Shown piece after piece: positions 8,826 through 31,382 of a DNA stretch of 64,000 nucleotides. Position 1 is the stretch's first letter; each line of letters starts with the position of its first letter. A model generated the notes under the pieces. It was not told the origin of the DNA and searched no databases. It saw only the letters and a program-made list of their open reading frames with translations. The position numbers and the translations under genes are program-made. Source of the DNA: Anthoceros angustus (Eukaryota > Plantae > Anthocerotophyta); the NCBI GenBank assembly GCA_010909165.1, contig VJWM01000173.1, positions 310,001 through 374,000 of the forward strand, written 5' to 3'.

Positions 8826-9025
8826 CACTCTCTCATTGCTCGCCTAGTCTCATCAGATGCTTTGGGAAGGTACCCACACTCTGATGAGCCGCTTAGTCTG
8901 ATCAGGTGCTTTGGGAAGACACCTACACTCTCATGAGCCGCTTAGTCTGATCAGGTGCTTTGGGAAGATACCTACACTCTGATGAGCCGCCTAGTCTGAT
9001 TAGGTGCTTCGGGTACCGACACTCT
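8826..9025 (+). repeat. ~49-bp tandem repeat, about 4 copies
   Basis: The unit CACTCTGATGAGCCGCTTAGTCTGATCAGGTGCTTTGGGAAGAYACCTA starts at ~8826 (degenerate), 8877, 8926 and 8975. Confidence 0.9.
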
Positions 9026-9847: not shown

Positions 9848-10000
9848 GCATCGTTCTTGTCCGTTCAACGTACAGCAGGTGCAGCCGAGCGTGATTGCTG
9901 CCTGCCGCCAGGTACAGTATGTACATAATTGCAGCATCGTTCTTGTCCGTTCAACGTACAGCAGCTGCAGCCGAGAGTGATTGCTGCCTGCCGCCAGGTA
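9848..10000 (+). repeat. Two-copy ~86-bp-period direct repeat in the DCL upstream region
   Basis: GCATCGTTCTTGTCCGTTCAACGTACAGCAG..GCAGCCGAG.GTGATTGCTGCCTGCCGCCAGGTA occurs at ~9848 and ~9934. Confidence 0.85.
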
Positions 10001-10360
10001 TGTAATTGCAGAAACGGGCTGGGCTTCCCAGCATCCTGGATTCTCGAGGCACTGCCTGTGCCATGTGCAAAAGCTCAGGGGCACTCTCCTCCTACCGCTC
10101 CATCGCCAATTCCTCTTTAGCTTCTCGTGGGTTCCTCTTCAGTTTCTCGCGGGCTCCATCTCCAGGCTTTTCAGTGGGCCAAATCCCTCAGGGCGGCAAT
10201 GAGAACCACCGGGCCTTAGAGTTCGGCTGAGCAGGACCAAATTCTGGATTCGTATTCGGACTACTCAGGTTTGCATGCTGGTCTCTTGCAGCACTAAGTG
10301 CTAAGTGGTTCAATTGGGCCTCTGTGGGTTGTTCCAAATCAATCATGAACTTGGTGTTTG

Positions 10361-13300
10361 ATGGGCAGCTCGCGGACAGAATTGGAGACTTTCACCTCTG
10401 AAATGGAGACGGAGGGCAGTCTTGGGAAGCGCAAGAGGGATGATAGTACCCATCCCACTGTTCTGGACCCTCTGAAGCGGGAGAAGCGTCATCAGCGCTC
10501 AGAGAGTAGGAAAAAGAAGCCAAGGTCTGAAGTCAAGGTGACGAGAAAGGAGGGCGGGCACGGGATTGATCTTGAGGAAGAGACGAAGCAGCTCGTCCCG
10601 TTAGACGCGGACTCTATTGCGCGGAGGCAAGTTCAGTGTAATCTTGTGAGCTGCAAGGAAGGTGAAATGGGGGGCTGACTGCAATTGCGTCGTGCCGGCT
10701 GCTGCAGGTATCAGCTAGAAATTTTGGAGATAGCCAAGAAACGCAATGTCATAGCCTACCTTGAGACAGGATGTGGGAAGACTCTCATTGCTGTGTTGTT
10801 GATAAAGGCTTTGGCACCTCGGCTGCGAGACCCGTTAAACAAGCGTATCGCAGTGTTCATTGTCCCCAAGGTTCTCTTGGCTGTTCAGGTAGCTACTCTC
10901 TTCCTTCCGCCGCAGCTCAGGCATGGACTCCATGTTTGTGGTGAGCTCATGTTGTTGGCTTGCAGCAACTGGGGGTTATCAGAGTTCATACGAGCTTGAG
11001 AGCAGAAGCCTACTATGGCGACAAGGGTGTTGATGGCTTTAGTCTGGATGACTGGAGGAAAGAGATCGAGACCCATGATGTACGCACATAATTTACTGGA
11101 GCAACCTTGCTGTGCTGGCCTTCTCTAGTGGCTTTATCTGAGTGTGTTCCCGTGTTCAGGTTTTGGTCATGACTCCCCAGGTGTTCTTAGATGCCTTGAA
11201 CGCGGCAAAGATTAAATTGGATATTGTTGAAGTTCTGATACTAGATGAGTGTCATCATGCAAAGGGCAAGAATCCGTATGCAAAGATAATGGAGGTAAAC
11301 ACCAAAATAATCGAAGTGTAAACACCTTGAATGTGCTTTGATTCAGAGACCGGAGGGTGATGGAGTTTCTTGCAGGAGCATTACCGTGCATCCCACTATA
11401 AACCGAAAGTCTTTGGAATGACAGCTTCTCCAGTTTCTCGAGGTAGGTCACTGGTGAAAGGGTCGTCAGATCTTCACTTATGCCTTCACCTTGGTAGTAC
11501 AAATCTAATGCTCTAAGGTGTTTCAGGGGTTAATGACATGCAGGACTGTGAGGTGAAAATAAAGGAGCTGGAACAGATGCTGGACGCCCAGGTCCTGTAC
11601 ACTCCTTATCCTTGACACGAGATGCATTTGTATAACTGATGAGCACCCTTCCCACTGAAGGCGTTTTGGCTGGAGTTTGCAGGTTTGCACACCAAAAGAC
11701 CGCCTAGGAGTGGAATCTTTTGCTCCGTCCCCGAACGAAATCGGGTACTATTATGAGGGTCCTGGCAGCGATCCTGACCCAAGACTTTCCGCCTTGGAGG
11801 AGCTGAAAGAGAGGGTAAGCATTTAAAAGTTACTGCCAGCGCTTTCTAAGGTGTCCTATGCTATGTCTCTGGACACATGTGAAGGGTAATTGTCCCTGCT
11901 TCCAGTACGCAGTGCTCAGTGTAGAAGAGTCCGGAGCATCAAATCACAGTGGAGAATATGAAGACGAGAAGATAGCTTCAAAAAGGCTCAAGAGCCACAT
12001 CTCCAGGCTCTGCGGATCTATTTTACATTGTGTTAAGGATTTGGGATACTGGTGTGCCATAATGGTATGTTTGTCTGCTTCAGCAAATGCAACTCATCCT
12101 GGTACAGCCCTGATATAAACTTGATGCTCTTTAGGTGGTGTCAAAGTTGTTGAAAGACAATGCACCTCCTATGACATTTGCGTGTTTGGATTGCGAATTC
12201 ACAAACTACATCATCAAACAACAAAAGGGGTTCCTTGCAGAGGCCCTCAAGCTTCTCCAATCTATCGTTGTACCAGGTGAAAGGCTGTGTTGCTTTGCCA
12301 GCTCTTCTTGGAGGCCTTACGTGTTAAACTTTGTCTCAAGCACCCCGATTGGAACTCCTTCAGGTGAACCTGGACAGGAACTGGTGAATAATCTTGTGAC
12401 CCCAAAGGTGCAGCTGCTTGTTAAGGTTCTGAAGGGTTACAGGTCGGTAACTCATCAGATCGAAAATTTGGGGATAGATTTCTCTATTCAAGAGATGATG
12501 GCATCCCTGTGCAACCTTCTCATGTCTCTGCATCTACCTCTTATGTCACAGGGACAGAGCAGATCTTCGGTGCATTGTGTTCGTTGATAGGGTTATTGAC
12601 ACTATTGGACTGTCCGAATTAGTCAATGCACTGAGTAGACTGGGTTCCCTCTCTTTTCTTCGGTGTGAATTTCTGACTGGTAATAGCGGTTCACATGTGG
12701 ATACTAGCACCAGCAAGCAACAGTCTGTCATAGCGGCCTTTCGGCTAGGCAAGGTTATTATCTGCATCTTCCTTTGATGAGTAATCTCAGACGATTCTGA
12801 AGCCTCACCCTCTAGTCTTCTGGCCCATTTCTGAGTTTTTGCTCTCTCTGAAGCAGGTGAATATCATAATTGCCACTGATGTTGCAGAGGAAGGCCTCGA
12901 TGTTCAAAGCTGCAATACAGTAATAAGGTTCGACCTGCCAAAGACGCCAATCAGCTACATTCAGTCTCGTGGACGTGCTCGTCAGCCAGGATCTGATTAT
13001 GTAGTTCTTCTAGATAGGTAAGAGAAACATGTGTAACTAATCAAGGACATACTTGATAATTCCAGAATTGTCTGTCATCTATGTATGCCCTTCTGGCCTG
13101 ACAGGAGGGCAGGACAGCTGGGGGATCTTCTCACGATGAAAGCCAAGGAGGGAAATATGAAGGCACTGTCCCTTGAGCGTGAAGGTCAGGCTCCCGACCC
13201 GACTCCATGCCCTTCAGATGCTGTCCTTCCAGAGTTTTACAAGGTGGAAACCACTGGGGCCATTGTCAATACCAGCTCCAGCGTAGCTGTTGTTTATCAG

Positions 13301-16300
13301 TACTGCTCCAAGCTACCTAAAGATCGGTATGTGGATGACTGCACATTCCAACTGATGGTTCCTAGGCTGTCCTTATGCTTTGCTTCTTCAATCCACTGGG
13401 CTATTGTCAGTACAAAGTGAAGCATAGCTCTTGTTCTTCAGTACTGCAGCAAGTTTCTAAACCAGATCAGTAGCGGATAACTTCACATTCCAAGTGATGG
13501 TTCCTAGGCTGTCCGTATGTTTTTCCTCTTCATTACAACTTCCATCTCTTGGTTCTGTTCAGATTTTACTTTCCAAGGCCAGACTTCAGCTTTTCTATGG
13601 CTGCATACAATCAACGCATTTGCACCCTCAAGCTACCTGCAAATGCATTGATTCATGAGGAAGTGGGCCCCCCGAGGAATAGTGCTGCTTTGGCAAAGCA
13701 GGTGGTTTGTCTGAAGGCCTGTGAAAAGCTGCACAAGTTGGGAGGCCTAAATGACCACTTGCGACCAGTCACAGATGCAGGGCCAGATAGCAACTTTGTG
13801 GACACGGGTGGCAATCAACCAAAGGGGAGAGGTACTTTGTAGCTCAATGTTGTGTGATCCAATTCTTTGATGACTCATGTCTCACTGACAATGCTTACTG
13901 TGTCGCAGGCATTACGAAGCAGAAAGAGCTCCATGCAACAATTTCAACCAAAGGCTTGGAAGGTTGTTGGGGCAACAGTAAGCATGGAGCTTCACTGTAT
14001 GCTTATATCATGACATTCACACCAACATTCTGTGAGGGGAAGGAGTTTGGTAATTTCGTCCTTCTGTTGGAGTCTGAGCTGGAAAATGATGCAGCTGAAC
14101 TAGTAGTCAAGCTGACCTTAAAAGTGGGCCAGATGGTGAACGCCACCTTGATTCCGGCCTCAAAAGTAGAGCTGGATGTAAATGAGGTGAGTTTATCACT
14201 GTTTTTTCGCTTGCAACCTTCTTGTGGAGAGTGCTGGAATGACTGGTTTCCAAATCGTATCCCCTGACAGCTCGCAGATGCTAAGAAGTTTCAGGAGGTA
14301 TTTTTCAATGGCATGTTTGCCAGACTAGTGGCCCGTTCACCAAAACAGGCTGGCTTTTCATCTTGGAAGGTTGATGACCTTTGTTTTTCCAGAGAAAGTC
14401 TGGACAAGCTGTGGGAACAGTCGAGGATGTACTTGCTGCTACCCTTGGCAAAAGTATCCAAGGAAATTGGATCAGCTGTGACAAAGGGATTACAGGCACA
14501 AATCAACTGGGAGTATGTGCGAAAAGGGGCTCATGTGGCAAAGTTTCTTGCTCATGAGAATGAAGTTGATGGCTTCTCCTCAAGTGACATTAGAAGCCTA
14601 AAGGATGAGAATGGGGAACAGGAACCAACGAAATCAAGTTCCAATGCCTCCGTACAGCTTGCTGATGGTGTGGTTAGCCTTGATCAGATCCTGGATACTG
14701 CTGTAGTCACTCGTCACACTGGCCGGATTTATTTTGTGACCAAACTCCTTGAGGGAACTAATGCCCTCACTGCATTTCCTACAAACAAGGGGCAGGAGCA
14801 TGTGGCGGAAAGCTCTGGACCGGTTCCACAGAAAACCTACGAAGATTACTTCAAAGAGAAGTATGTTTTGGCATTGCTGCCTTTATATGAGAGATGGCAT
14901 GTGCAAATTGCTGTACTTTTGTTACTGTTGCAATTCTGAAGGTCGTCATTGTGTCAGGTATGGTGAGACATTGAAACATGGCCATCAAGCATTCTTGCAA
15001 ACAAAGCATTCGCACCGTGTGCGTAACCTGCTCATACGCTCAGAGCAACTAGGTATGTGCTGGGGGCTGTCTATTTGTGCATAGGCTTCTGCTGTTACAT
15101 GATCATCAAGCTGATTGTCACTAACACCTGCATGTTGTGGGCAGTTGACGTGAGGAATGTGGGGAAGAAGGAACATAGATTTGCAAATATTGCCCCTGAG
15201 CTCTGCATATCTACAGGGCTACCACTTTCAATCTTCCATACATCATACTTAATCCCTTCAGTGATGCATTATCTTGAGGCACTCTTGAAGGCTAGCCAGT
15301 TGAGAAGGACAATATCATCAGCAATCTCTGATTGCCCAGGCATCCCATTAGCACGGGTACGTGAATGCACTAAGCCTGTGATGAGCAGGTCAAGTGCAAT
15401 GTTGTCTGATGTAAGTTCTTGTGCCTCTGCAGATTGTGGAGGCCCTGACAACCTCCAGGTGTCTTGAAGACTCATCGCTAGAGAGGTTGGAGCTGTTGGG
15501 CGATTCTTTTCTAAAGTATGCAGTCAGTCGATGTTTGTTCTTGGTATTTCAAAGTAAGCACGAAGGGCAGCTTTCAGCCAGACGAAGTCGAGCCATTTCC
15601 AACAGCAACCTGTATAAGCTTGCTGTTGCACGTCAATTACCTGTAAGGTTTTACTGCACACCCCGACTGTCCAAATGCTTTTGGACCCTATTGTTTCATA
15701 TCAATCATACAAGGATACCATTTTGCAGGCTTATATTCGGGATGAGGTTTTTGACCCAAATCGTTGGCTTGCTCCTGGCATGAGGAGAAAGTTTGAGGAG
15801 CTCTGCCATTGTGACCTTGCAGAGCTTCACGTCCCTGAGACTGGAGCAAAGTCTTCGGCAGACTCGTCCTGTGGTTTCCAGCACGGTGGCCTGAAATCGT
15901 TTAGGAAAGTTGGTAAAAGCTGTGTTGATGGTCATCGGTGGCTGTGTCTCAAGACCATGGCAGATGTTGTAGAGTCATTGATTGGGGCATATTATTTGTA
16001 TGGTGGTGAAACTGCTGCATTGCGTTTCATGAGTTGGGTTGGAATTGAAGTGGAATACGAGGACTGCCTAGTAGATGGGCTGCAGAAGCAAGCGTCAGTG
16101 AAACCAGAAGTGATTGAAAGTGCTGATTTAGCTCCTTTGGAGGCTCGCCTCGGGTACACTTTCAACAACAAAGCGCTTCTTGTGGAGGCAATAACTCATG
16201 CATCGCAGCAAGATGGAGTGGGCAGCCGCTGCTATCAGGTCAGCAACCAAAGTGGCAGTGGATTGATGACTGTAATCACTTTTTGTTGCAACTTCTGGTC

Positions 16301-18015
16301 TGACTGATGTTGGGTTGCCACTGAGTTGGAGTTGTGGTGGCTTTATGGACATTCTGAAGCGGATGGAGTTCCTAGGAGATGCGGTGCTAGATTTTGCGAT
16401 AACGAAGCAGCTTTTCACAGCTTACCCGGATCTGGCTCCCGGGCAGCTGACAGACCTTCGATCAGCTGCTGTTAACAATGGCTGTTTCGCCCGAGTTGCT
16501 GTCAAACATAACCTGCAGCACCACCTTCGGCATGCGTCAAGGGCACTTTTAAGCCAGATAGAGCAATTTGTATGGAGTATAAGTCAAGAAGGTTCTCATG
16601 CTAGAGAGCGTGTATGTGGATGGGAAAAGGAGAGCGGACCTAAGGTATCCTTCCCCTAGCTGCTAAGTCTTGTAGCAGTAAGCCAGGCTTTTGATGTCGA
16701 CATACTGATCTCTTGTTCATGGTAGGTCCTTGGAGACATGGTGGAGAGTATAGCTGGGGCAATAGCTCTTGACACTGGATTTGATCTGGACAGAACATGG
16801 GATGTCATGGAAAAGTTGCTCTCTCCGCTTGTTACACCAGCAACTCTCACTGTTCATCCTGTTAGGGAGTTACTACAGCTGTGCCAGACCCAAGGATTTT
16901 CCGTGCACACAGAAGTAGGTGGTCATGAGGACATGTTCACCGCCTCAGTGAAAATCTCTGATGGCGAAAGGACACTCACAGCTTCATCGACGACAACGAG
17001 TAGAAAGGCTGCTCGCAAGGATGTTTCACAGAAGCTACTGCGAAAGTTGCAGGTCGGATATTTCATGTGCCTCCTGCTCGTTGCTTTTTTTCATTTGCTC
17101 TTTGCAGCTGTATGGATCTGTAGCACACTAACAATATTGTTTGCTTAAAGCAGAAATATAGGCATCAAACAGGGAAGCTTTCCAATCCGAAGGACTGCCC
17201 GTTCCCTTCAGATTCAGGGTCAGAAGAGAACGCAGGAGAGCAATGCCCCACTGCTGATTCCGGTTCATCTCATAGGCACACAGAATTGCTAGTATCTCTG
17301 AATCAGGAGCTTTTGACCACGGACGAAACTCTGGTCCCAGTTGAGATACGTCGTGAGGAGGGTGCGACGAATGCTGATGAATGGGTGTCCATTGACAAGG
17401 ATCTTCACTTGGATGGAGATCAGGCACCTATTATGAAGAGGAAACTGGACTTTGGAGACAGCACTGATTCTGCTTCCGGTCTGGCCAACAAGAGGATTAA
17501 GCTATCAGCAGGCGATCATCAGCCGGTGCAGACCCATGCTGACATCAGCACGGCCAGTGCAGGTCTGGATGTGTGACCCAGTGGATCTATCATCTTCCAG
17601 TGAGCAAAGAACGAGGTTGAAAACTTATGGTTTTGATAGATTGCACTCTTTGCAGGTGAGAAACTACTAACAACTGCTTTGGACTCCGGACGAGCCAAGT
17701 CAGCTCTTCATGAGCTATGTGCCAAGAATAGGTGGCGTGGTCCGTCCTTCGCGGTCTTCAAGGAGTCAGGCCCTGCGCACCTTAAAAGGTATTGGGGCCT
17801 GCCTCTGTCTGCACTCACTCGATGGGCTTGATGCTGCTGCCACCAGGAAACCTGATATCTGTGTACTTACGTGCAGATTCCAATGCTCCGTCACGGTTGA
17901 TGTGCCTGGCGGTGGACCAACCGTTTGCTTAGGGACGGAAATGTCGGGCAAGAAAAAGGCTGAGCATTCTGCAGCATTTGAAATGCTCCAGAAGTTGAAG
18001 GTGGGCAGCCTGTAA
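10361..18015 (+). CDS. Dicer-like endoribonuclease (DExD helicase, Helicase-C, DUF283, platform/PAZ, RNase IIIa, RNase IIIb, 2 dsRBD); DCL3-like
   Basis: Motifs include [53 protein letters not shown]283 ([20 protein letters not shown]), [48 protein letters not shown] and PK|[12 protein letters not shown]. The dsRBDs read [11 protein letters not shown] and [16 protein letters not shown]|RF. The start may be 10361 or 10403, and the clade call is tentative. Confidence 0.95.
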
Positions 18016-20100
18016 CCCTAACGTTCTTGGACGGTGCTCCTTTTATCACTGCAGTCTAGCACCTGCAGAAGGAGGGGGACAAGGGCGAGGGAGAGGGAGG
18101 AGGGAACTGGAGGGGGCGGTGGGGGGTCTAAGGCCACTGGCATGTAGCCGTTTGATGCGCTTGTGCTGTATCAGTATTTTGACCACCAGACGTTCGCCCT
18201 GGCTCAAGGAGCTGTGGGGAAAACGAAACTGAAGACACTGCAAACCCGCTGATGCAGCATGAGCTCGAGGTGGAACAGGGGGCTGAGGACGCGAAGAAGG
18301 TACTCCCGAACCTTCATGCGATCCATGCTAAGGCCTCAGTCAACCTGAGGCGATATCATGACGTCACCCTGATCACCTGCAGCATGCCTCGCTACTCGTT
18401 GATTAAATGGCAAAATTGCAGAATTTGCACTCGGAGGCGCCTGTTTCACCAGAAGTGTGTCTGTGGCCACCACTACACTGAAAACTGTCATAATCCAGGA
18501 ACTGTGGATTTGATAGAAAACAAGGTGCAGCTTGCATCTGCCAGCTGAAACCTCACGGTGGCGAGTGCCCTTAGATCGCAAAGGATTGAGTCTCACGTAC
18601 AAGATCTCGATTCCAGGTCCAGTTTTCGTTCGTGGATTCGGATGCCTTGTCATCGTGAATGAGGCTTCGGGAATGGCTGTCCTCATTCCTGTTTGTATAG
18701 TTTCAAGATCCGCGCGGAACCACTCTAACAGCATCTCGCACGTTTTGGGAACGTGTTTCTACCTGTAACCGTATATCTATTATTTATCCTAAGGATTAAT
18801 CTGGTATTTATAATGTATAAATATTATCTAAGGTATATTACTAAGATAGGAATTTCGTAAACGGAAAGAGAACGGGTTGTCGTCCGTCTTCATGTTGGAT
18901 GGCTGCACGTCCACAAGCCGGGCTCCTGCCTGGTTTAGGTCTCTTCTTTGGTCTTCATGTATGCATACTCTGTATATCGTAACACTGAAAATGATAGATG
19001 AGTTATAGGAAGTTAATTTGTTCAATATAAGAACTAAGGGAGTGGAGTATGAGGTCTGCAATTCAATTTAAAATCTATTTAAGAAAAATAATCTTTTTAA
19101 ATGATTAAAATAACATTAAATTATGATTAGCATACAATTTGTGATGCATACAATTAATTGATGTCAGTAAACAGTTAACAATTAAACTAAACAACTAATT
19201 CAACTAAACATGAGGATTAGGGTAGCAAATTATTATGTACTCTTATTAATATGATTTCACATGAGAAACTAGCACGAGCCATCATATATCTTCATTCGTA
19301 TATACGGATACCAAAATCACGTTGGTAGTTTTGTGTTCAAGGACTTTCACTCAGGGACTTTGCTGCACCCTTCACAGGGATGACATTTGGATGTTGACAC
19401 ACATGAGCAATGTATAGCGACTGTTGGATGTGGTTGTAAGTACTGCAACCCTTGGTTGTTAGTGGCTGTACACAAAAGCTTTGAGAAGGAACATTCATGC
19501 AGGTTTCAAATTTAAAGCCACTGGCATTCAATGGGTTGTTCGATGCACTCGCCCCGTATCATATTTTTTACTTGCAGTAGCTTGTCTTCACTCCCTTGCA
19601 ATATAGGGCTGCAACCTTCAACAACTGCCTTAGGTAGAGGAGATAGCCTGCTGAGATGGAGACCCAACATGTTTTCAGGAAGAAGAATGAAGAGCCAACA
19701 TGAGTGAATTATCATGCTTGCATTACAATTAGAAGTAACATGCTTTCTAAGACAATGTTATCTTTTCTAAGTTATTTTATTAAAAAACTAAGTTGCTTAG
19801 GATTTAACACACAATTTATGGTATGCATAATTAAGTGAAATGAATAAAGAGTTATTGTTTAACTTCCATCTTAAAACTAAGGATTAAGGTCATTATTTAT
19901 TAATTAATTGATCATAAATTAAAAATAAACTAAAACAATACTGGGTACATGAGGGATAATACAGCTTCGTCCTTGCTCTTAACTTCAAGGGAAAAAAAAT
20001 ATTAAAGTGAGCAAAGTCTGCATTCAATAGTCGAGAAAAATTTATATGTTTGTACTATATATGTAATGCAACATGTCATTTAATCACCACAATTACCTAG

Positions 20101-21209
20101 CGCTGGTCTAATGTCAATATGGATGACATTATCTCTACAAAGGTTATAGATGAAATTACATCATTGCAAGAAACAATTGGTTATAATTTCCAAAATGTAC
20201 TACTTGTGCATAAAGTTTTCTACGAGCCGCAAAATCAAGAGAATATTAAGGTACATTAACTTCCTTCAATTTTTTTGCAATGTATTTTTACTATATTTTC
20301 CCCTAAATAAGGATCTATTTGATTGCAGTATCTTAAGCAATATGAGTTTATAGGGGATTTTGTGTTAAATTTTCCTCTATGAAAAATACCCAAGCGTACA
20401 TTCTGGCGTATTAAGTGATATGCGAGCAGCAGCTGTGAATAATGGCCACCTGGCTTGCGTTTGTGTCAAACAAGGTACAAGTGAGATACTTTGTGTACAT
20501 GCTATGTATACAAAAGTAGCGTTAAGCATAGCCAAACGCTATGCTTAATGCCTTCATATCTGGGATTACGATAAACTTGTTAAGGGTTTTCACTTGGCTA
20601 CGACTTGTGTGTTTGAAGGGCTTGCTGAATGCTTCCGTCATAGATTTCCGAATTATCATACATTGTGGAGAAACTAAATATTTAAGTGGAAGGAGATCAT
20701 ATACCATGGGGTACAATGAAACGACATCATGTATGTATTGTTTTTTTTCAATGTCATAATTTCAAATTGTCGAATAATGTTAAGTCCATAGATTAAGTTT
20801 TTGGGATCTTAAATGAGTTGTTACTAATCTATTTGATAAGAATATTAATATTATTATATGTGTAGATATTCGCCAACTATTATGAAAGTATTCTTGGAGC
20901 TATATATATTGACACATTCAAGTAATGAAAGCGATTATAAAACCGCTTTATTCTCGAATAGAGAAAGTCTCTCCATAGAACTTGCCACAAAATCCTGTTC
21001 GTATGGCACAAGAATTATGTCACCGGAAAGGTCTCGCATGGGAAGTAGACTACAAACTTTTAGACCATGGAACCACCAAGGCTATAGGAAGGGTGGTGGT
21101 CATTGCGAAGGGATGTCGACAAATTATAATGATCTACGAGACCAACCCACTTGTTGGTAAGAAAATAGCAAGGATAAATCTCGCACAAACCTTGCTACCA
21201 CAATTACAG
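20101..21209 (+). pseudogene. RNase III + dsRBD module 1 (DCL RNase IIIb/dsRBD1-like), disrupted
   Basis: Exons: 20101-20250 (SLQETIGYNFQNVLLV), 20329-20474 (YEFIGDFVLNF, frameshift, LSDMRAAAVNNGHLACV), 20619-~20730 (GLAECF..IPWGTMKRHH) and 20866-21209 (IFANYYESILGAI..NPVRMAQELCHRKG..KKIARINLAQTLLPQLQ). There are at least two frameshifts and an in-frame TAG. Confidence 0.8.
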
Positions 21210-21619
21210 GTACTTGTGTTGTACTTAATTTGCATAATAAAATTATTTTTTTATTAATTATATTAATATATGTTAATTATTATGAACAAATATTATGTTG
21301 CAGAAGTTACCTTATTTCAGGTTACCAGCTTTTGGGCAAAAAATTTCTAATATGCAGTGTAATTATTTTTAAAATTTTTCTTCTCATTCTAATTTTGGCA
21401 TGTTTTCTTGTAATATCTTCATATATATACCTAGAAATATTTTCTTTAATATTATTATGTACAAAGGAGTTAAATGTTTTTGATCTAACTTTTGAGCTAT
21501 TATGTGAACTAATATTTTCAATCTAACTTTTGAGCTATTATATGCAGTAGTAAGAGACAAAATGCAAATTGAAGCTTGAGCACAACCCAAAGATCTAAAC
21601 GAGGACGTAAAGAGACTCC

Positions 21620-22622
21620 ATGGAGGGTGTATTGAATTACAGATTTTATCATAAGGTTATTGCTCGAGATATTTATGGGCCTTCAAGTGACCCTCAAATT
21701 CAGGTTAAGGGCTTTAAGACTAATCTTATTTATTCCTATTATCAATATAGTATTATTATAAAGTTAACTTATCTTGCCTTTATGTTATAGCTTTTAGTTA
21801 GATCGTTGACGTTTAGGTAATTCATTATGTTTTTTTTCTCATAGTATTACTTATAAAATATTAACAAATCTAAGATTGCAGTACATGAAGCGCTTGGAGT
21901 TTTTGGGCAATAGTGTGCTTAGCTTTCTAGTATCCAAGCAACTGGTTCAAGTATATCCAAACGAAGATTCTGGGAAATTAATTGACTTGAGAGCAACAGC
22001 GGTAAACAATGGACACTTGGCAAATGTATGTCTAGATATGGGCATAGCACAATGTTTCAGTCACAAAATAGAGCACTACGATGGTATTGTCAACGACCAC
22101 TATGCAAGAAGGACTACAAGCATTACATGGGGAAGTCCAAAAAGGCATCAAGTAAGCTTATTTTATCATATTTGTTTCAAAAAGTTTGAACTTTTTTGTT
22201 TGGGTCCTAGATAGTGAAGCAAGACATGTTTCTTGGTTTAGATATTGGCAGACTATTTGGAAACTATCATTGGAGCAATATTTTGGGACACACAGTTTAA
22301 AGAAGAGAAAGTGCAAACGATTTTACGTCCACTTACTGAAATTATCACAAGTTGCAGAGTGCAAGACTTGGCAATGAACCCAGTTCGTCTTGTCCAGGAG
22401 GCATGTCAAGAGAAAGGTATCAACTTTGTTACAACGTATGAAAATCTGGTTGGCACTAAGTTGACGATGGCTTTGGGAGTTTTAACTGATCCAAGGAAGC
22501 CTCAAGATCTTTTATTGATGGAGAGATCAGTTCCTTCATCAAGTCGAAAGGCAGCACGTATAAATTTAGCTGAAAAGATAGAACCACATTTGCATGTAGC
22601 TGCTTGTGAATCTTTTGACTAG
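21620..22622 (+). CDS. RNase III + dsRBD module 2 (RTL-like); potentially intact 3-exon ORF of 244 aa with a catalytic D to N change
   Basis: Exons 21620-21703, 21882-22151 and 22242-22622 are joined by phase-0 GT-AG introns. The product reads MEGVLNYRFYHK..|YMKRLEFLGNSVL..LRATAVNNGHLA..|ILADYLETIIGAIF..NPVRLVQEACQ..SRKAARINLA. It may instead be part of a decayed larger gene. Confidence 0.6.
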
Positions 22623-24066
22623 TTTAAATTCTACGTTTATGAAGCTTGACGTGAAATACTAATCTCTTGTTTTCTAATGTGTTAGAGCTTAACAAATTAT
22701 AAACTGGTGAATTCAAGAATCCATTGTAAAGTTCACACTTCTGTCCTTGTTTATGCAAACATTTAAATGTTAAAGTTAATGTAATTGAACTTCTAACAAG
22801 TGAATTGCATCGTCAACAAATGAAAGGTACACTTTGATCTCATTTGGAAAAATTGGAGGAATTGTGTTCTCGAGAGCATAGAATATGGATAATCTATCCT
22901 CCAACTGCTCAAAGAAGAAGGTCCTCCAAATTGCAAAAAATAAGATTTGAAGTCATTTGAAAAAACTTATGCTCATTTGTTATCTATTTTTATTATTTTT
23001 ACTGTTATTCTTATAAAGGTTTACTTATATGATGAATATTGATGTACCAGATGGAGTGCGTAGGGGATTCAAAACCTAAACACTTAACCATTATACAAAT
23101 GCAAGAAGGACTACAAGCATTACATGGGAAGTCCAAAAGGCATCAAGTAAGCTTATTTTATCATATTTGTTTCAAAAGTTTGAACTTTTTGTTTGGGTCC
23201 TAGATAGTGAAGACATGTTTCTTGGTTTTAGATATTGGCACTATTTGGAAACTATCATTGAGCAATAGGGACACAGCTTAAAGAAGAGAAAGTGCAAACG
23301 ATTTTACGTCCACTTCATCAAATTATCACAAGTTGCAGAGTGCAAGACTTGGCAATGAACCCAGTCTTGTCCAGAGGCATGTCAGAGAGAAAGGTATCAA
23401 CTTTGTTACAACGTATGAAAATCGGTTGGCACTAAGTTGACGATGGCTTGGGAGTTTTAATCGATCCAAGGAAGCCTCAAGATCTTTTATTGATGGAGAC
23501 GCCCTTCATCAAGTCGAAAGGCAAAGACGTATAAATTTAGCTGAAAAGATAGAACCACATTTGCATGTAGCTTGTGAATCTTTTGACTAGTTTAAATTCT
23601 ACGCTTATGAAGCTTGACGTGAAATACTAATCTCTTGTTTTCTAATGTGTTAGAGCTTAACAAATTATAAACTGGTGAATTCAAGAATCCATTGTAAAGT
23701 TCACTTCGTCCTTGTTTATGCAAACATTTAAATGTTAAAGTTAATGTAATTGAACTTCTAACAAGTGAATTGCATCGTCAACAAATGAAAGGTACACTTT
23801 GATCTCATTTGGAAAAATTGGAGGAATTGTGTTCTCGAGAGCATAGAATATGGATAATCTATCCTCCAACTGCTCAAAGAAGAAGGTCCTCCAAATTGCA
23901 AAAAATAAGATTTGAAGTCATTTGAAAAAACTTATGCTCATTTGTTATCTATTTTTATTATTTTTACTGTTATTCTTATAAAGGTTTACTTATATGATGA
24001 ATATTGATGTACCAGATGGAGTGCGTAGGGGATTCAAAACCTAAACACTTAACCATTATACAAATG
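22102..24066 (+). repeat. ~1-kb tandem duplication (22102-23098 / 23099-24066)
   Basis: The two copies are near identical. The second has many 1-4 bp deletions in its 5' half, and the junction lies at the microhomology ATGC(G)AAGAA. Confidence 0.92.
22830..23090 (+). pseudogene. Degenerate DCL-type terminal dsRBD
   Basis: LEELCSRE..LLKEEGPPNCK|RFTYMMNIDVPDG..ECVGDSKP aligns with the [21 protein letters not shown]|[13 protein letters not shown]. It carries frameshifts, and the donor reads ATAAG instead of GTAAG. Confidence 0.65.
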
Positions 24067-24359
24067 CGAAGAAAGTCAGAGGAGTCTTCAAATCATCATC
24101 GAAAGAGGCTGAAAGTAAGTGTTGTGCAAATTTGAATTTCGTACAAGTTTGTTGAAATCGATTTGGTTTTAGACGTTACTTTTAAGAAGGATACAGTCTC
24201 TAAAATATATTTGATATGGTAAAAATGGTAAAACTTCTAAAATTATCATGACCTAAATCCTGCGTGGATTTTGTTTTGAGATGAACATGACATCCACTAA
24301 TGGACCTTATTGTTTGGTTATGAATCTACGCATCCGCATTCATGAGCACGGGCATCTTT

Positions 24360-24902
24360 CCCCAAAAATTTCCTATGAACACAAGGCTCGAGACCCTCAG
24401 CCCTAAGAGTTCGCATCTCTGCGGGAAAGAATTCCTACGCTCACAAGGCTCGGGACCCTCAACCCTATAGGTTCGTAGCTTTGCGGGAAAGCTACGCTCA
24501 CAAAGCTTGGGACCCTCAGCCCTATAGGTTCACAGCTCTGTGGGAAAGAATTCCTACGCTCACAAGGCTCGGGATCTCCAACCCTAAAGGTTCGTAGCTT
24601 TGCGGGAAAGCTAGGCTTGGGACCCTCAGCCCTATAGGTTCGCAGCTCTGTGGGAAAGAATTCCTACGCTTACAAGGCTCGGGACCCTCAGCCCTAAAGG
24701 TTTGTAGCTTTGTGGGCAAGAATTCCTACATAACGGCTCGGGACCCTTAGCCCTATAGGCTAGGGACACTCAGCCCCATAGATTCGCATCTCTGCGAGAA
24801 AGAATTCCTATACACATAAGGCTTGGGTCCCTCAACCTTATAAGTTCGCAGCCTGGTGGGAAAGAATTCCTATGCACACAAGGCTGGAGACCCTTAGCCC
24901 TG
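24360..24902 (+). repeat. ~62-bp tandem repeat array (about 9 full or partial units)
   Basis: The unit GGCTCGGGACCCTCAGCCCTATAGGTTCGCAGCTCTGYGGGAAAGAATTCCTACGCTCACAA repeats with starts at 24385, 24447 and onward. Confidence 0.92.
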
Positions 24903-25209
24903 CTTCCTATATAACCACAAAACAAGAAATTGCACAAACCTTTCAAATCCATTCTCATCTTGTCACAAGCTGAATCTGGCAAGCTTTGCCCCGATTCCAG
25001 TGGGTCTGAGCTGACTATCAGGCTTGCAATCCTTAATCCATGACTTTCGCCTCCCGCAACATCCTTGCAGATTTTTTTCTAACGGATCCAAAGCATGTGC
25101 TGCGACACCCTAGCTCCTCTTCCTACTTTTCTCCAGTAACAAAAGCCAAGCCTTTGCTTTACAAATTTCACTTTGATGTTCTAGCAAGTGCCTTTTCAAA
25201 ACACGATAA

Positions 25210-25540
25210 TTTTTGAAGGGGGGGAATATAGTAACCCCTTCTACGAGACAAGACCCTTGTCCTAAGAACACCTTTCCTAGAACAAAGATATCCTCTACTT
25301 GATAATGCGATACCCTTCGAGGTCATACCTTTGATAAAAGATGCACTTTCAAGTCTACACCGAGAACCGGAGCATGTGAGGGTGGGCCGTTTATGCTTTA
25401 GTAGAATGCATAGAGGGCTGCCATTTTCATATGTTTATTACAACCGAAAACTTTTACTTTCAAGTGGTGGAACACAACGAAAACAATCCTATACTAGCGG
25501 GAGTCTCATTTTAGTGGTTGTGAGAACATTGCAACAAACA
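25210..25540 (+). mobile_element. Possible LTR-retrotransposon 3' end (polypurine tract plus degenerate LTR start)
   Basis: TTTTGAAGGGGGGGAATA followed by TAGTAAC resembles a Ty3 PPT/TGTAAC junction. No second LTR or pol sequence is visible. Confidence 0.3.
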
Positions 25541-25699
25541 ACTGCTAAAAGAGGAAGTGGTCATCAACATCGGCAATAGTCCAGCGGTATGCCCGTGTGG
25601 AAGCGCGGAGAGGCGCCGCGGCGCCTCCTTCCGCGTGCCATTGTGTCCTCCTTCCACGCACTGTCGTGGCACTTCCACGCTTCCATCAAAATTCAGTGA

Positions 25700-25915
25700 G
25701 CTAACCCCGCAATGAAGGCTAACCTTAGAAGCAAATGCTGAAATCCAAATCGGCCAGATGCAGTCGGTCCAGTGTAGAGGTACTCCTTCCACGCACTCCC
25801 CACGTGGCACTTCCGAAATTGATAACCCCAGAAGCAACCTGGAATGAAGGCTAACCTTAGAAGCAAATGCTGGCAAATCGAGACTGCCGGTCGAGTGTAG
25901 AGGGTACTCCTTCGA
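25700..25915 (+). repeat. Two-copy ~132-bp direct repeat
   Basis: AATGAAGGCTAACCTTAGAAGCAAATGCTG occurs at 25711 and 25843, each followed by AGTGTAGAGG..TACTCCTTC. Confidence 0.8.
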
Positions 25916-27789
25916 AACATCTCATGTCACGGTGGACAAAAAGCGAGAGGGTAAGCTCAAGTGTGGTTGTACAACTCCTGCGAGTCAAAGTGCCAAGATA
26001 GTGATGATGACAATGCAGAGAAGTGGACCAAGTGATGGGAAGGATTGAACTACGGGGATGAGTGAAACCGAAATCGCTTTTTCCCGGGGTCCCGAGTTAA
26101 TGTTGTAAGTCAGTTCTTGATGTTCGAGTTAGGAAATACCTGTGGCTTTTTGTGGTGTCATAACAAACCACATTTTCCTTTCAAACCGAGTTCTGATCGT
26201 CCCTTCCGCAAGAACGGCCTTCCTCACCGTTCCTACTTTGCATTATTCCCTAGGTTCGAGTTTGCGACCATTCGATACAAACATTCGATGGAAAGTAGTA
26301 ACTTCTTGGTGACACCTTTTTTTGGTTGTTTTTCGCAATGCCTTCAAAACGCTGTTTTAGGGCCCATCAAAAACCCCCTTCAGAGATTATTTGCGGGAAA
26401 GCCCCCTTCGAGATTATTCACCCCCTTCAAAAATTATCATGTTTTAAATGCATCAGTCTTCTCTTTCAGCTTTTTCAGGTCTTCCATGAAAAGTGCCATA
26501 GGAACCCCTAGTAAACATGCAAAGTTGGCTTTTTTGTGATCAAAGGCATGTACATCCAAACATAAACCATAAATAATCAGCGGTTACATTGTACACTAGC
26601 ACACTACCAACAATCATTGCAACAAAGACTTATAAAAGGTGTGCGCGTCCACCGTGGACAGATTTCACAAGTCCTCCTACCACGACCCTCGAAGCAACAA
26701 ATAGCACACGGAACAACGTAATGCTACCTAAATATGCTTACTTGGCAAGATTGTGCTTGGGAACTCCATTCTTCCCACCTGCCACCAGTCTTCCTTCCTT
26801 GTGTCATGACTTGTGATGTCATTGACCAATGATGTTTGTAGTTTGTGAAAGCCTGTGACACAGTAGCTATATGACAAGGTGTGTGCAAGGCTGTAACTTG
26901 TGTATGAAACTATGCTTTGCAAGTGAACTTAGACAAACTGTTAAGATGCAATGTAAGAAGCACACCACGGGATCAAGTTTAATTAAAGGAATCACAATAT
27001 AAATAAAAGTTACTAGGAGATTAGTACCGGTTATTAAATTAGTAATTATTATATAACGAGACTAAGAACATCGAAGTTAGGAAATCGTTAGGGACATGCT
27101 TGAAAGTCAGTTTCTACGCAAAAGAAAGTATTCTTTTGGAAGTTCTTGCGCAAAGGCTAGAGTAGAACGATCTCTGTGCTCATCTTTTACGTTTTGAAAC
27201 TTTAATGCAAAATGGTAAGCTTGGATGTTCTAATCATTGATTAGAACATCCAAGCACAATACATAAGAAAACAGCGTAGAAAATATGATTCTATTGATAG
27301 AATCATATTTTTGTATTGTGTATTGTGTATTTGTTTGTGTATTAAATGCCTACATAAGAACACAACTTCGAAAGTTGTTAGATCAGCAAATAACTTCTCA
27401 GAGAAGAGAGCCCAGCACATTGTGCTTTCTTGCATATAATTATAGGCAAAGACCATAGTTATTAAACCACTTGGCTCCTGCATATGTCTTGGTGTCGCGG
27501 TCATTTTGACTCAAAGCAATTCATGCCAGACAGTGGAAAGGGACTGATCAACCCATTAACATGTCTTGATGCAAGACTTATTAAAGCACGACACCCGCAT
27601 GCTTTACGTTACTTTTTCCATTCCGATGTTGGCCACGTGGTACCCTTAGCTACCTGATTACCGTACAGCATATCAAGCATAGTTTGGCACGTTCCAAACC
27701 CTTCATTTCAATCTTTCAGATAGGTCCGACAACCTATTTTAGATATTTCTTATTTTTGATAATTCTGTCCTAGGCTTGCGAGTCATATG

Positions 27790-28940: not shown

Positions 28941-29360
28941 ACCCGCGGAATACCTTTTGAGTCCCTACGAGTAGTAGGTGAAGAGCGTAGATATCCCTTA
29001 GGACTAGCCTTTTGGTGGAGCGTATGCTTTGGTTGGATAGATAGTGTAGTGCTTGGGGAGTGGTGGAGGGGATTCGCCTCTTCCCTCCCCTCTCAAATAC
29101 CCTCCGACTGACATAAGTTTTGTCGACGGTTAGACAAGTGCACATGGCAAGTTTGGTAGGACGCAGCAACCATAGGAGGTTCTGAGACAGGTTTGTAAAT
29201 AACCTTGATAGATATAGAGACGTTTACACATTGAAAATAAAGAAAACATATCGATAGCCAAAATGAGGCCCGTCTCCTCCATTTGTCCATACACAACAAG
29301 CGCCTCTTAGGCGAGTCCCAGCAATCACAGTATTCCATATGATCACATTCTTTGTGTTTG

Positions 29361-29405
29361 TATATATATATATATATACACATATATATACATATATATA
29401 ATATA
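29361..29405. repeat. (TA)n microsatellite
   Basis: Directly visible. Confidence 0.9.
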
Positions 29406-29414
29406 AAAATCTAG

Positions 29415-29500
29415 TGTGTCTTCCAGTTCATCACATTTTGCATACATGTCCACTAGGCAGGTGCCACCACTACGTTGTCCACTACTACTACATATATCCA
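29415..29500 (-). pseudogene. Short second PPR fragment
   Basis: GTCLVDMYAKCDELEDT is the canonical PLS-PPR motif. It is truncated next to the (TA)n tract. Confidence 0.7.
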
Positions 29501-31382
29501 TCAACAGGGGTGAGTAAATATTGATAATGAAAAGGGCTATCACTTGTAAGGCTTGATATGCGTGGTACCAAAACTTGACGTGCATGGGCTTCCTTTTCCT
29601 AATGGGAGGTTAGCCTTGGATGTACTTTGAAAGAAATGGATAGTTTTATATTTTATTTCATGTGAATATTGACTGAGTTCAACAACTCTTTATTACATGT
29701 GTATAAGTCTCTTGGAACTAACTTGTAACACTCAATAAGATTATTTATTTTATTTTCATCTAAAAATAATATAGCTATTTTAAATATCTCAGCAATGGTG
29801 ATATGAATAAACACTCATTACTTTATTGTATGGTATATCCAAGATAACAATCTTCAAGTTTATAATATACTCCAATCATGTTAGGACACTTCTTGGCTAT
29901 CAATTCATCATGTATGTATTGAATGCAAGTTTTACACTGTAACTTTGTGCGCATAGTTGCCTTCATAAACCCATCAGAACTCCAAGAGTAGCATGAAATT
30001 GTGATTGCAAGTGTAGCCGGTAACTGATTTCCACTTATGGAAAATTGAGTTTTATACTCCAATTTCTTTGGAAGGTCATTTGGGAATCTCAAGTATGCTT
30101 CGTGGGGTGCTTGACGAAGTGTTATAGTCAAAAGATTAATAAGTTCTGGGGAAACTAGTTTCCCTGCACATATAAAATCTAGCACATCCGTTTGAGGTGG
30201 GAGTTCTGGTCCATAAATTTGAGCTGATGTGTTACGAAGATTTCGATAGAAGATGAATATAATCATTATTAGGTTTAAGAAATGAAAAATATTTGAAGAA
30301 TTCATTATAAATGATAATAGATGGTGTAAAATATATAGAAGAAACTATAGAAAAATATTGTGCAATATATCAATCTATGATCTTTGCTTTGTTGGTCATG
30401 AATTGATTCACCAATTTGTACAAAATGTTAAGATCGATCATAAGAAACAGCTTGATCTTTGCTATCCAAATAATTATGATATTATGTGATTAAGGAAATA
30501 ATCATCATGCACTTCTTGTTCGAAATAGAACTTGAAAACCCCTCATACCTATAAGTTGTTAAAGGGATTTACCTCTTCTCTTGGTGCACATATCAAAAAA
30601 TAAACGTATCATAATATTTCACGTATAATTTTTATGCATATCATAAAGGTTATTTTTTTGATATTTAGATTTTTAATAGTAATAATAATAATTTTAATAA
30701 ATTTTAATAGTATTTTTTTGATATTTAGATTTTGATATTTAGATTTTTGATATTTTGTAGAATATATGATATATATATATTGTTAGTAATATATTCTACT
30801 TCATCTCGGAAGGAATCAAAAGATGCAATAAGTTCTACTATTTGATAAGAAAAAAGGTTAGAATACCTAATTAATTATAGAGACCTTAATATACTACCTG
30901 GACTTTAATAGACTATGTATTAAGATAGTCTGTTTAGAGGCTTGTTGAAAGCAATTCACTTAGGTCTGGAAATCGATCACTAGATGAACGGGGCTGTAAG
31001 AGGCTGCTACTTCGGCAGTGGTGGAAAACCCTAATGGCGAAGGACTGTCGCATGAACCATGAACAGAATGTCACCGTCGAGGATTGAAATTTGTGAAGGC
31101 TAAATACTTGGATACTGTGTTTCGAAGGGATTGGCTGGTCTGCTCTGAATAGACAAAAGAAATGAGAAATTGTATGCCCGTTTCCAGCGCGAGATTTGTA
31201 AGGACTAATAGGATATCGACAGGGCCTACAGCTTCGCAGGTTTTCCTAGATTACCGATCTTCTGCCTGCCACGTCTTATCCTGAGGCTTCATTTATCACG
31301 GCTTACGCACTTCGACTTCCCAGTCATTCAGCATTCAGCCATCCCGATTGTTCCCTTTGTTCTGAGCGCGAGGAGACTGACA

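What the first reader, a model, noticed from the sequence alone, without database searches (positions are those of the whole stretch)
20101..24120. Cryptic Dicer-derived RNaseIII-dsRBD-RNaseIII-dsRBD-dsRBD locus directly behind the DCL gene
Seen: 2 kb after the DCL, on the same strand, AT-rich exons splice into two RNase III+dsRBD modules plus a terminal dsRBD. They share motifs with the adjacent DCL C-terminus (LRxxAVNNG, PVRxxQExC, SRKAAR, KExGP..RF..DVPxG). They also share its intron positions (PK|VLGD = HQ|ILAD, LQ|gt, K-R|F; the intron before RxEF is within three codons). No helicase or PAZ is present. Known: plant RTL proteins are helicase-less RNase III+dsRBD proteins; Arabidopsis RTL1 suppresses siRNA production and RTL3 has 2 RNase III + 3 dsRBD. 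Inference: an independent, local birth of an RTL3-like gene by partial DCL duplication and module doubling, forming a linked Dicer/Dicer-modulator pair that is now partly decayed.
Basis: partly seen in the sequence, partly recalled or inferred. Interest (0 to 1): 0.85.

Follow-up and report, generated by a model that had tools for sequence, protein, structure and literature searches.

The report
Dicer-derived mini RNase III gene cluster
Just behind a plant Dicer gene lies an AT-rich cluster of short Dicer-like "cutting domain plus RNA-binding domain" genes, one broken and one still readable but lacking key catalytic residues. It belongs to a small gene family also found in a related species, so it is not a one-off local invention.

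Summary
From 20119 to 24152 (+), 2.1 kb after the DCL stop codon, a 33% GC block holds RNase III + dsRBD units with no helicase, PAZ or RNase IIIa.

- **M1 (20119-21209)** is a pseudogene with at least 5 lesions.
- **M2 (21620-22595/22622)** splices cleanly into an open 236-244 aa frame (P about 3e-8 by chance). It has K and N at two catalytic acid positions.
- **The terminal dsRBD** is only a decayed remnant.

The units share three or four intron positions with DCL genes of four species. Two angiosperm RTL genes lack introns at those positions. Residue characters favour DCL over RTL, 11 columns to 3. A Dicer origin separate from canonical RTL1-3 is therefore supported, although trees cannot settle it (AU p about 0.4).

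"Local, independent birth of an RTL3-like gene" is only partly supported:
- A related species (SRR33208241) carries the same AT-rich family at a locus with no DCL upstream.
- Earlier scan notes report further copies in this genome.
- M1 and M2 are only 35-40% identical, and each has its own ATG.

No expression or read data could be obtained. The scan had already noted M2 (s1-680477) and sister loci.

The parts
16128..17052 (+). Context: RNase IIIb + dsRBD1 exons of the adjacent DCL gene (exons 16128-16238, 16360-16644, 16726-17052). The whole gene is about 10358-18015.
   Evidence: PF00636 65 bits and PF00035 26 bits. Exon ends checked. PDB matches to AtDCL3/1/4.
18771..24150 (.). AT-rich block (34% GC) that carries the locus, set between roughly 48% GC DCL sequence and 45% GC repeats.
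   Evidence: Composition. CpG o/e is 0.56, not lower than in the DCL gene (0.45).
20119..21209 (+). Unit M1, a decayed RNase III + dsRBD1 pseudogene. Pieces: 20119-20250 | 20329-20376, frameshift, 20378-20473 | ~144-nt insertion | 20618-20674, stop, 20686-20730 | 20866-20919, frameshift, 20922-20975, stop, 20979-21209. The signature keeps D45 but has Q at E38 and N at D114.
   Evidence: Frame map, piece translations, splice sites, tblastn to DCL IIIb.
21620..21703 (+). Unit M2, exon a. It holds the ATG and the N-terminal helix of the RNase III domain; the donor is CAG|gttaag.
21882..22151 (+). Unit M2, exon b: the RNase III signature exon. It has K at E38, keeps E41, and has N at D45 (E. coli numbering).
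   Evidence: PF00636 47.7 bits. PDB hits to the IIIb domains of AtDCL3, DCL4 and DCL1. Alignment.
22242..22622 (+). Unit M2, exon c: the RNase III C-terminal helices (D114 and E117 kept) plus dsRBD1. There is a donor at 22595|gt; if it is unspliced, the frame ends at the stop at 22620-22622 (244 aa in total).
   Evidence: AF2 pLDDT 90 with a dsRBD fold. Foldseek hits to AtDCL3, Dicer IIIb-dsRBD and TRBP. phmmer. Open frame in 0 of 20000 shuffles.
22847..23079 (+). Remnant of a second dsRBD: 22847-22876 and 22905-22940 in different frames, a lost donor (ATAAG), then 23017-23076 followed by a stop.
   Evidence: Short collinear matches to DCL and RTL2 dsRBD2. Junction sequence.
22102..23098 (+). 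Tandem duplication, unit 1 (997 nt). It runs from the last 50 nt of M2 exon b to the middle of the last dsRBD2 exon.
   Evidence: the repeat finder D2-D15. Alignment A1.
23099..24063 (+). Tandem duplication, unit 2. It holds a copy of exon c (23232-23566) with about 16 small indels and a copy of the dsRBD2 remnant (23812-24041). The last ~350 nt are 100% identical to unit 1.
   Evidence: Alignment A1. Frame map.
24045..24152 (+). The original 3' end of the last dsRBD2 exon (alpha-2 region, SSSKEAE-type motif), after an in-frame stop.

Best explanation
The locus is a tandem cluster of a lineage-specific family of helicase-less 'mini-Dicer' genes. Each ancestral unit was RNase IIIb + dsRBD1 + dsRBD2. 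The family most likely arose by genomic (intron-retaining) duplication of the 3' part of a DCL gene, and it is distinct from the canonical angiosperm RTL1-3 genes.

Shown:
- The cluster holds one dead copy (M1).
- It holds one copy (M2) whose three exons splice into an open 236-244 aa RNase III + dsRBD frame.
- It also holds a decayed second dsRBD and a recent 997-bp partial duplication.
- The same AT-rich family, with the same exon structure, occurs in a related species at a locus that is not next to a DCL.

Inferred:
- M2 stayed open along a long branch, so it has probably been under selection for most of its history.
- If it is expressed, it would dimerise through its RNase III domain and bind dsRNA through its dsRBD.
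- It has K and N in place of two of the acidic metal-binding residues, so it would cut poorly or not at all. It would act as a dsRNA binder or decoy, or as a partner for a catalytically intact relative, and not as an RTL1-type siRNA-destroying nuclease.
- The family may have been founded at this exact spot from the adjacent DCL. That is possible (roughly 35-40%) but not shown. If it happened, it predates the split from the related species.
For: Domain identity.

Lesions and open frame:
- Lesions in M1 and clean ag/gt sites around the M2 exons.
- M2 frame open in 0 of 20000 shuffles, analytic P about 3e-8.

Family in a related species:
- A phmmer search of 1.84 billion proteins finds only 5 hits. 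The best two (35-40% identity) come from Logan sample SRR33208241.
- Those contigs are AT-rich islands (35-40% GC) in GC-rich flanks, with one and two modules.
- The same sample holds the syntenic Cullin-PITP-DCL block.
- All five modules form one clade, support 95-100.

DCL-type gene structure:
- Shared intron positions in M1, M2, L001_B and L002 and in the DCLs of the window, L003, L006 and L007.
- 15 of 25 DCL IIIb fragments from other samples match exactly residues 37-133 of the query, which is the same exon.
- RTL2 and RTL1-like genes of angiosperms have different introns.

Residues:
- 11 columns shared with DCL and not RTL, against 3 the other way. 5 shared only with the window and L003 DCLs, against 1 for L006 and L007.
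- Catalytic mapping.
- In AtRTL1, D96A and E92W abolish cleavage, and E89A/D96A abolishes siRNA suppression (PMC4687873).

Other copies: earlier scan notes report further AT-rich RNase III-dsRBD genes in this genome.
Against:
- Sequence trees do not resolve the origin. The family is sister to DCL IIIb with only 75-90 support. AU tests reject neither family + RTL (p 0.40) nor family + adjacent-DCL lineage (p 0.39).
- Only two angiosperm RTL genes were checked for introns, and no RTL from a non-seed plant was available.
- The first shared intron is offset by three codons.
- Identity to the adjacent DCL is only about 30%, and the DCL's ~190-aa linker between its dsRBDs is absent.
- The frameshifts in M1 and the indels in duplicate unit 2 could partly be assembly errors in AT-rich sequence.
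Confidence: 0.55

Rival explanations
1. The whole locus, M2 included, is a non-functional relic. It is a decaying tandem array of pseudogenes with no present role, and the open M2 frame is a survivor that lost function only recently.
For: - M1 has at least 5 lesions.
- dsRBD2 has a frameshift, a lost donor site and a stop.
- Duplicate unit 2 is full of indels.
- M2 lacks two catalytic acids.
- L001 in the related species is also damaged in both modules.
- The AT-rich composition fits drift towards mutational equilibrium.
- AtRTL3, the known double-module RTL, has never been seen expressed (PMC2275086, PMC4687873).
Against: - M2 has a terminal branch of about 0.7-0.9 changes per site, yet it has no stop or frameshift in 236 codons of 40% GC sequence (P about 3e-8), and all six splice sites are intact.
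- L002 in the related species is equally open.
Confidence: 0.3
2. One reading: one RTL3-like gene (RNase III-dsRBD-RNase III-dsRBD-dsRBD), born here by partial duplication of the adjacent DCL followed by module doubling, forming a linked Dicer/modulator pair.
For: - Adjacency (2.1 kb) and same strand.
- DCL-type introns.
- Residues shared with this DCL's lineage, for example the W before the PK|VL intron and the PVR and SRKAAR motifs.
- M1 and M2 pair in the tree, 91-94 bootstrap.
- By my rough estimate, chance adjacency of a handful of such loci to a handful of DCLs in a genome of at least 120 Mb is unlikely.
Against: - Each module has its own ATG. An in-frame stop precedes the M2 ATG, and no phase-compatible acceptor exists there.
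- The family clade includes another species' modules, so the origin predates that split.
- L001 has two modules with no DCL upstream.
- M1 and M2 are 35-40% identical, so the doubling is not recent.
- The M1+M2 pairing carries a long-branch warning.
- There is no evidence of any modulator activity.
Confidence: 0.12
3. The units are fast-evolving members of the canonical plant RTL1/RTL2 family, and their position next to a DCL is a coincidence.
For: - In the 1.84-billion-protein search with exon c, the only named hits were angiosperm RTL2/RTL3-like proteins, and no DCL reached E 1e-3.
- The architecture equals RTL1/RTL2.
- The AU test does not reject family + RTL (p 0.40).
Against: - The intron positions differ from RTL2 and RTL1-like genes and match DCLs.
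- Residue characters run 11 to 3 for DCL, including VNN in place of the RTL STEKL motif.
- The best tree places the family outside the RTL clade (93/86-89).
Confidence: 0.1
4. The AT-rich block is an assembly artefact or contaminant joined to the DCL contig.
For: - There is a sharp GC step at about 18770.
- Duplicate unit 2 differs from unit 1 almost only by small deletions, a pattern typical of unpolished long-read sequence.
Against: - An independent short-read assembly of a related species shows the same kind of AT-rich RNase III island embedded in GC-rich flanks on a single contig.
- The genes carry plant DCL-type spliceosomal introns.
- A second AT-rich island lies at 29-31 kb in the same window.
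Confidence: 0.03

Closest known systems
Arabidopsis RTL1 (RNASE THREE-LIKE 1)
   Same: One RNase III domain plus one dsRBD, with no helicase or PAZ, and of similar size (289 aa against 236-244 aa for M2).
   Different: - RTL1 needs E92 and D96 to cleave, and E89/D96 for siRNA suppression (PMC4687873). M2 has K and N at the E89 and D96 equivalents.
- The RTL1-like gene examined (Cannabis) has introns at other positions.
- The tree places M2 outside the angiosperm RTL clade.
Arabidopsis RTL3 and other double-module RTLs (for example the Lactuca, Gastrolobium, Humulus and Nicotiana proteins found here)
   Same: Tandem repetition of RNase III + dsRBD modules. In the tree, modules pair within each species, so the doubling recurs independently. 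AtRTL3 is likewise not detectably expressed (PMC2275086).
   Different: Here the two modules are separate units, each with its own start codon, and one of them is dead. They do not form a single open frame. The intron pattern is the DCL type.
RNase IIIb-dsRBD C-terminal region of plant DCL proteins (AtDCL3 7vg2, AtDCL1 7eld, DCL4 9kby)
   Same: Best sequence and fold matches. Shared exon boundaries and motifs (VNN, PVR, SRKAAR).
   Different: No helicase, DUF283, PAZ or RNase IIIa. No long linker between the dsRBDs. About 30% identity. Catalytic substitutions.
Aquifex aeolicus RNase III D44N (PDB 2ez6)
   Same: M2 carries the natural equivalent of this laboratory mutation, Asp to Asn in the signature motif. 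The entry appeared among the fold matches (rank 18).
   Different: It is a bacterial enzyme and an engineered mutation. That the mutant is catalytically impaired is from my own knowledge and was not tested here.

Membership tests
Plant RTL1-3 (canonical RNASE THREE-LIKE) | RNase III domain plus at least one dsRBD, without helicase or PAZ | tested here: met
   PF00636. dsRBD fold. No helicase, PAZ or IIIa remnants.
Plant RTL1-3 (canonical RNASE THREE-LIKE) | Groups with the RTL1-3 clade, apart from Dicers (Comella et al. 2008, PMC2275086) | tested here: inconclusive
   The best trees put the family beside DCL IIIb (75-90 support) and the RTLs apart (93/86-89). AU does not reject family + RTL (p 0.40)..
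Plant RTL1-3 (canonical RNASE THREE-LIKE) | RTL-type gene structure: signature in exon 1, introns after ...LDEKV and before IFRDLLEP, and none at PK|VLAD | tested here: not met
   Handroanthus RTL2 and Cannabis RTL1-like, compared with the window units. Only two RTL genes were examined.
Plant RTL1-3 (canonical RNASE THREE-LIKE) | Intact catalytic acids (E..E...D and D..E) | tested here: not met
   M2 has K and N at E38 and D45. M1 has Q at E38 and N at D114.
Dicer-like (DCL) | Helicase, DUF283, PAZ and two RNase III domains in one protein | tested here: not met
   tblastn of all upstream DCL pieces against 18016-26000 gave no hit at E 0.01 or better.
Dicer-like (DCL) | Exon boundaries of the RNase IIIb-dsRBD1 region | tested here: met
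   Same phase-0 introns in the window, L003, L006 and L007 DCLs and in M1, M2, L001_B and L002. The first intron is offset by 3 codons.
Processed pseudogene / retrocopy of a DCL | Loss of introns | tested here: not met
   Introns are retained, with ag/gt sites.
Class 1 (bacterial-type) RNase III acting as a homodimeric nuclease | Single RNase III domain + dsRBD with all catalytic acids; dimerisation | tested here: not met
   The architecture is met for M2, but two acids are replaced. Dimerisation was not tested.

The most novel reading that the evidence does not exclude
A plant lineage outside the angiosperms independently invented its own RTL-like family by duplicating in place the 3' end of this DCL gene. 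Members such as M2 (and L002 in the related species) persist as catalytically disabled RNase III-dsRBD pseudo-enzymes. These bind or sequester dsRNA, or pair with intact relatives, and so tune the output of the neighbouring Dicer.
Probability: 0.15. Interest if true: 0.7.

Novelty: new variant of a known kind. Interest (0 to 1): 0.45.

Why it matters
Helicase-less RNase III-dsRBD proteins (RTLs) are known regulators of plant small-RNA pathways, but their origin and their diversity outside angiosperms are poorly charted.

This locus suggests that such proteins can arise more than once from the 3' end of Dicer genes. It keeps Dicer's intron pattern as a footprint. The copies then spread, double and lose catalytic residues.

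If the open copy is expressed, it would be a natural 'dead RNase III' dsRNA binder sitting next to a Dicer. That would give a testable case of enzyme-to-decoy evolution in RNA silencing. If it is not expressed, the locus is simply a well-preserved record of gene birth and decay.

Tried and rejected
- **Short-protein searches.** The search for homologous proteins with the M2 signature-exon ORF found nothing, because the length filter excludes full-length relatives. This says nothing about absence.
- **Sequencing runs.** Neither expression nor the assembly of the 997-bp duplication could be checked.
- **Organism.** Exact look-ups of window proteins found no record.
- **Earlier findings.** The search of earlier findings by sequence and by words was blank.
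- I redid the step with coordinates only.
- **Transposon carriage.** No TE domains in flanking ORFs. No terminal repeats around the block.
- **Methylation-driven decay as the cause of AT-richness.** CpG o/e in the block (0.56) is no lower than in the DCL gene (0.45).
- **Positional orthology of modules (M1 = L001_A, M2 = L001_B).** Modules group by species instead.
- **Synteny of L001 with the window.** No shared flanks.
- **Island behind the orthologous DCL.** The L003 contig ends about 100 nt after the DCL stop, and it shows no end overlap with L001 or L002. Whether the orthologous DCL is followed by an island is unknown.
- **Joined M2 model.** The joined (spliced) model was not sent to any search or fold tool. 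Searches and the fold were done exon by exon, by reference. Exon translations were concatenated only inside scripts, from coordinates, for alignments, local BLAST and trees.
Full report
**Setting.** On the + strand the window carries a cullin gene, a single-exon PITP gene (7040-8644; PF02121) and a DCL gene (about 10358-18015). The DCL stop codon is at 18013-18015. From about 18770 the GC fraction falls from roughly 0.49 to 0.33 and stays there until about 24150. The finding lies in this AT-rich block.

**Anatomy.** A three-frame map, Pfam, tblastn with the DCL's own C-terminal exons and a splice-site check give the following picture.

*Unit M1 (20119-21209)* has the exon pattern a | b | c, but it is broken:
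- a frameshift at about 20377;
- a ~144-nt insertion (20474-20617) with no acceptor site;
- a stop at 20675 followed by a frame change;
- a frameshift near 20920;
- an in-frame stop at 20976-20978.

*Unit M2* has three exons: a 21620-21703, b 21882-22151 and c 22242-22595.
- All three are flanked by canonical ag/gt sites and all are in phase 0. Together they give an open 236-aa frame.
- If the last donor is not used, the frame is 244 aa and ends at the stop at 22620.
- Exon b scores 47.7 bits on PF00636, against a cutoff of 27.
- Exon c is not recognised by Pfam as a dsRBD. An AlphaFold2 model built on a 12-row alignment has mean pLDDT 90. It shows two RNase III helices followed by alpha-beta-beta-beta-alpha.
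- Foldseek's best matches to that model are AtDCL3 (7vg2), mammalian Dicer IIIb-dsRBD and TRBP dsRBDs.

*Downstream of M2* there are only remnants of a second dsRBD. These are four short collinear matches (E 0.05-0.25 each) in three frames. The expected donor reads ATAAG instead of GTAAG, and a stop follows at 23077.

- Unit 1 is 22102-23098 and unit 2 is 23099-24063.
- The two units are 96-100% identical.
- Unit 2 differs from unit 1 almost only by about 16 small deletions in its first 660 nt, and it is identical over its last 350 nt.
- That pattern is odd for neutral decay and may reflect unpolished assembly. I could not test this.

No helicase, PAZ or RNase IIIa remnant exists between 18016 and 26000.

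**One gene or several?** Each module begins with its own ATG, at the start of the RNase III N-terminal helix. Three codons upstream of the M2 ATG there is an in-frame stop. No acceptor there is compatible with the phase-0 donor that ends M1. The locus is therefore better read as tandem single-module units, each ancestrally RNase III + dsRBD1 + dsRBD2, than as one RTL3-like gene.

**Is the M2 frame chance?** No. The coding sequence is 40% GC. None of 20000 shuffles lacked a stop, and the analytic expectation is about 3e-8. M2 also sits on a long terminal branch of 0.7-0.9 changes per site. An open frame kept over that distance argues for selection during most of its history.

**Catalytic residues.** Residues were mapped in an alignment with DCLs and RTLs and are given in E. 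coli numbering.
- M2 has K at E38, keeps E41, has N at D45, and keeps D114 and E117.
- M1 has Q at E38 and N at D114.
- In Arabidopsis RTL1 the equivalent D96A and E92W changes abolish cleavage in vitro. The E89A/D96A double mutant no longer suppresses siRNAs (PMC4687873).
- An RTL1-type nuclease role for M2 is therefore unlikely. A role as a dsRNA binder or dimer partner is the natural inference, but it is untested.

**Relatives.** A phmmer search with exon c against 1.84 billion representative proteins returned only five hits.
- The best two (35-40% identity over the whole exon) are unnamed ORFs from one Logan sample, SRR33208241.
- The next are angiosperm double-module 'ribonuclease 3-like protein 2/3' proteins.
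- The two Logan contigs are AT-rich (35-40% GC). The longer one (L001, 8.9 kb) is an AT-rich island between 50-57% GC flanks and holds two modules. Its module A has all four acidic positions replaced. Its module B has canonical residues but a stop and a frameshift.
- The shorter contig (L002) holds one open module.
- The same sample also contains the syntenic Cullin-PITP-DCL block (L003). Its DCL IIIb exon is 68% identical to the window's. The sample is therefore a related species.
- L001 shows no DCL within 3.7 kb upstream and shares no flank with the window.
- L003 ends about 100 nt after the DCL stop, so what follows the orthologous DCL is unknown.
- Earlier notes of this scan list further AT-rich RNase III-dsRBD genes in this same genome, one of them about 101.7 kb beyond the window. 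I could not read those loci.

**Origin: Dicer or RTL?** *Sequence trees* covered RNase III + dsRBD1 and used 40 and 44 rows. Exon translations were concatenated from coordinates inside scripts.
- The five AT-rich modules form one clade (95-100 support) with a long stem.
- The angiosperm RTLs form another clade (93/86-89).
- The family is sister to DCL IIIb with weak support only (90/72, then 75/68 with four DCLs).
- AU tests reject neither family + RTL (p 0.40) nor family + the window/L003 DCL lineage (p 0.39).

*Gene structure* is more telling. M1, M2, L001_B and L002 share the following with the DCLs of the window, L003, L006 and L007:
- a phase-0 intron just before the signature exon, offset by three codons;
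- a phase-0 intron at PK|VLGD = HQ|ILAD;
- a phase-0 intron after dsRBD1;
- in the remnant, the phase-2 K-R|F position of dsRBD2.

Of 25 DCL IIIb fragments from other samples, 15 match exactly the span of that signature exon. By contrast, a Handroanthus RTL2 gene and a Cannabis RTL1-like gene have no intron at any of these positions. Their introns fall after ...LDEKV and before IFRDLLEP.

*Residue characters* agree. The family's majority residue is shared with DCL IIIb but with no RTL at 11 columns, including VNN in place of the RTL STEKL motif. The reverse holds at 3 columns. It is shared only with the window and L003 DCLs at 5 columns, against 1 for the other two DCLs.

I read this as good, though not conclusive, support for a DCL origin separate from canonical RTL1-3. 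It gives only a hint that this DCL's lineage was the source.

**Local birth?**
- *For:* the locus lies 2.1 kb behind a DCL on the same strand. That is unlikely by chance for a small family in a genome of at least 120 Mb (my estimate).
- *Against a recent or private event:* identity to the adjacent DCL is about 30%, with no DNA similarity. The DCL's long linker between its dsRBDs is absent. The family clade contains another species' genes. Members sit elsewhere in both genomes.
- If the founding duplication happened here, it is old, and the family has since dispersed.
- Modules group by species rather than by position. Doubling therefore recurs, as it does among the angiosperm double-module RTLs in the same tree.

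**AT-richness.** CpG depletion is no stronger in the block than in the DCL gene. No transposon domains or terminal repeats flank the block. The cause remains unexplained. The related species shows the same contrast.

**Limits.**
- Only two RTL genes were examined for introns.
- No DCL paralogues of this genome were available.
- The spliced M2 model was not submitted to any database or fold tool. Those steps were done exon by exon, by reference.

**Verdict.** This is a new variant of a known kind, of moderate interest.

Noticed in passing
window 24373-24926: Minisatellite directly after the locus: five copies of a ~110-119-nt unit (itself two ~62-nt subunits), 65-87% identical and richer in GC than the locus.
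   Followed up: no
window 29000-31000, ORF 29823-30305 (-): A second AT-rich island (29-37% GC) with an open 160-aa ORF that has no Pfam match. AT-rich islands holding odd small genes may be a feature of this genome.
   Followed up: partly
window 31383-32048 (+): A 221-aa ORF made of Gly/Tyr/Glu-rich repeats (five or more GRKPSYGRSEEEE-type units). No Pfam match.
   Followed up: partly
window 35783-38014 (-): Three tandem, nearly identical ORF copies (239, 158 and 201 aa) sharing a ~150-aa block, which points to a recent tandem duplication of an unknown gene.
   Followed up: no
L001:3463-6269 (Logan SRR33208241): The related species has a two-module AT-rich island. Module A has all four catalytic acid positions replaced and ends early. 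Module B has canonical residues but a stop and a frameshift.
   Followed up: partly
L003 (Logan SRR33208241) against window 5107-17000: The gene order Cullin-PITP-DCL is conserved between the window and the related species, with 65-81% DNA identity in exons.
   Followed up: partly
Proteins P0003, P0005, P0010, P0012, P0014, P0015, P0039, P0059, P0121: Among angiosperm double-module RTL proteins, the two modules of one protein are usually each other's closest relatives. This implies many independent module doublings (Lactuca, Gastrolobium, Tripterygium, Nicotiana, Asparagus). The exceptions are Humulus/Cannabis, where the doubling is shared; Macadamia, whose two modules group only within a Proteaceae clade; and Trapa, whose modules fall apart in the tree.
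   Followed up: partly
window 23099-23760 against 22102-22760: Duplicate unit 2 differs from unit 1 by about 16 small deletions and very few substitutions, then is 100% identical for 350 nt. This looks more like residual long-read error than evolution.
   Followed up: partly
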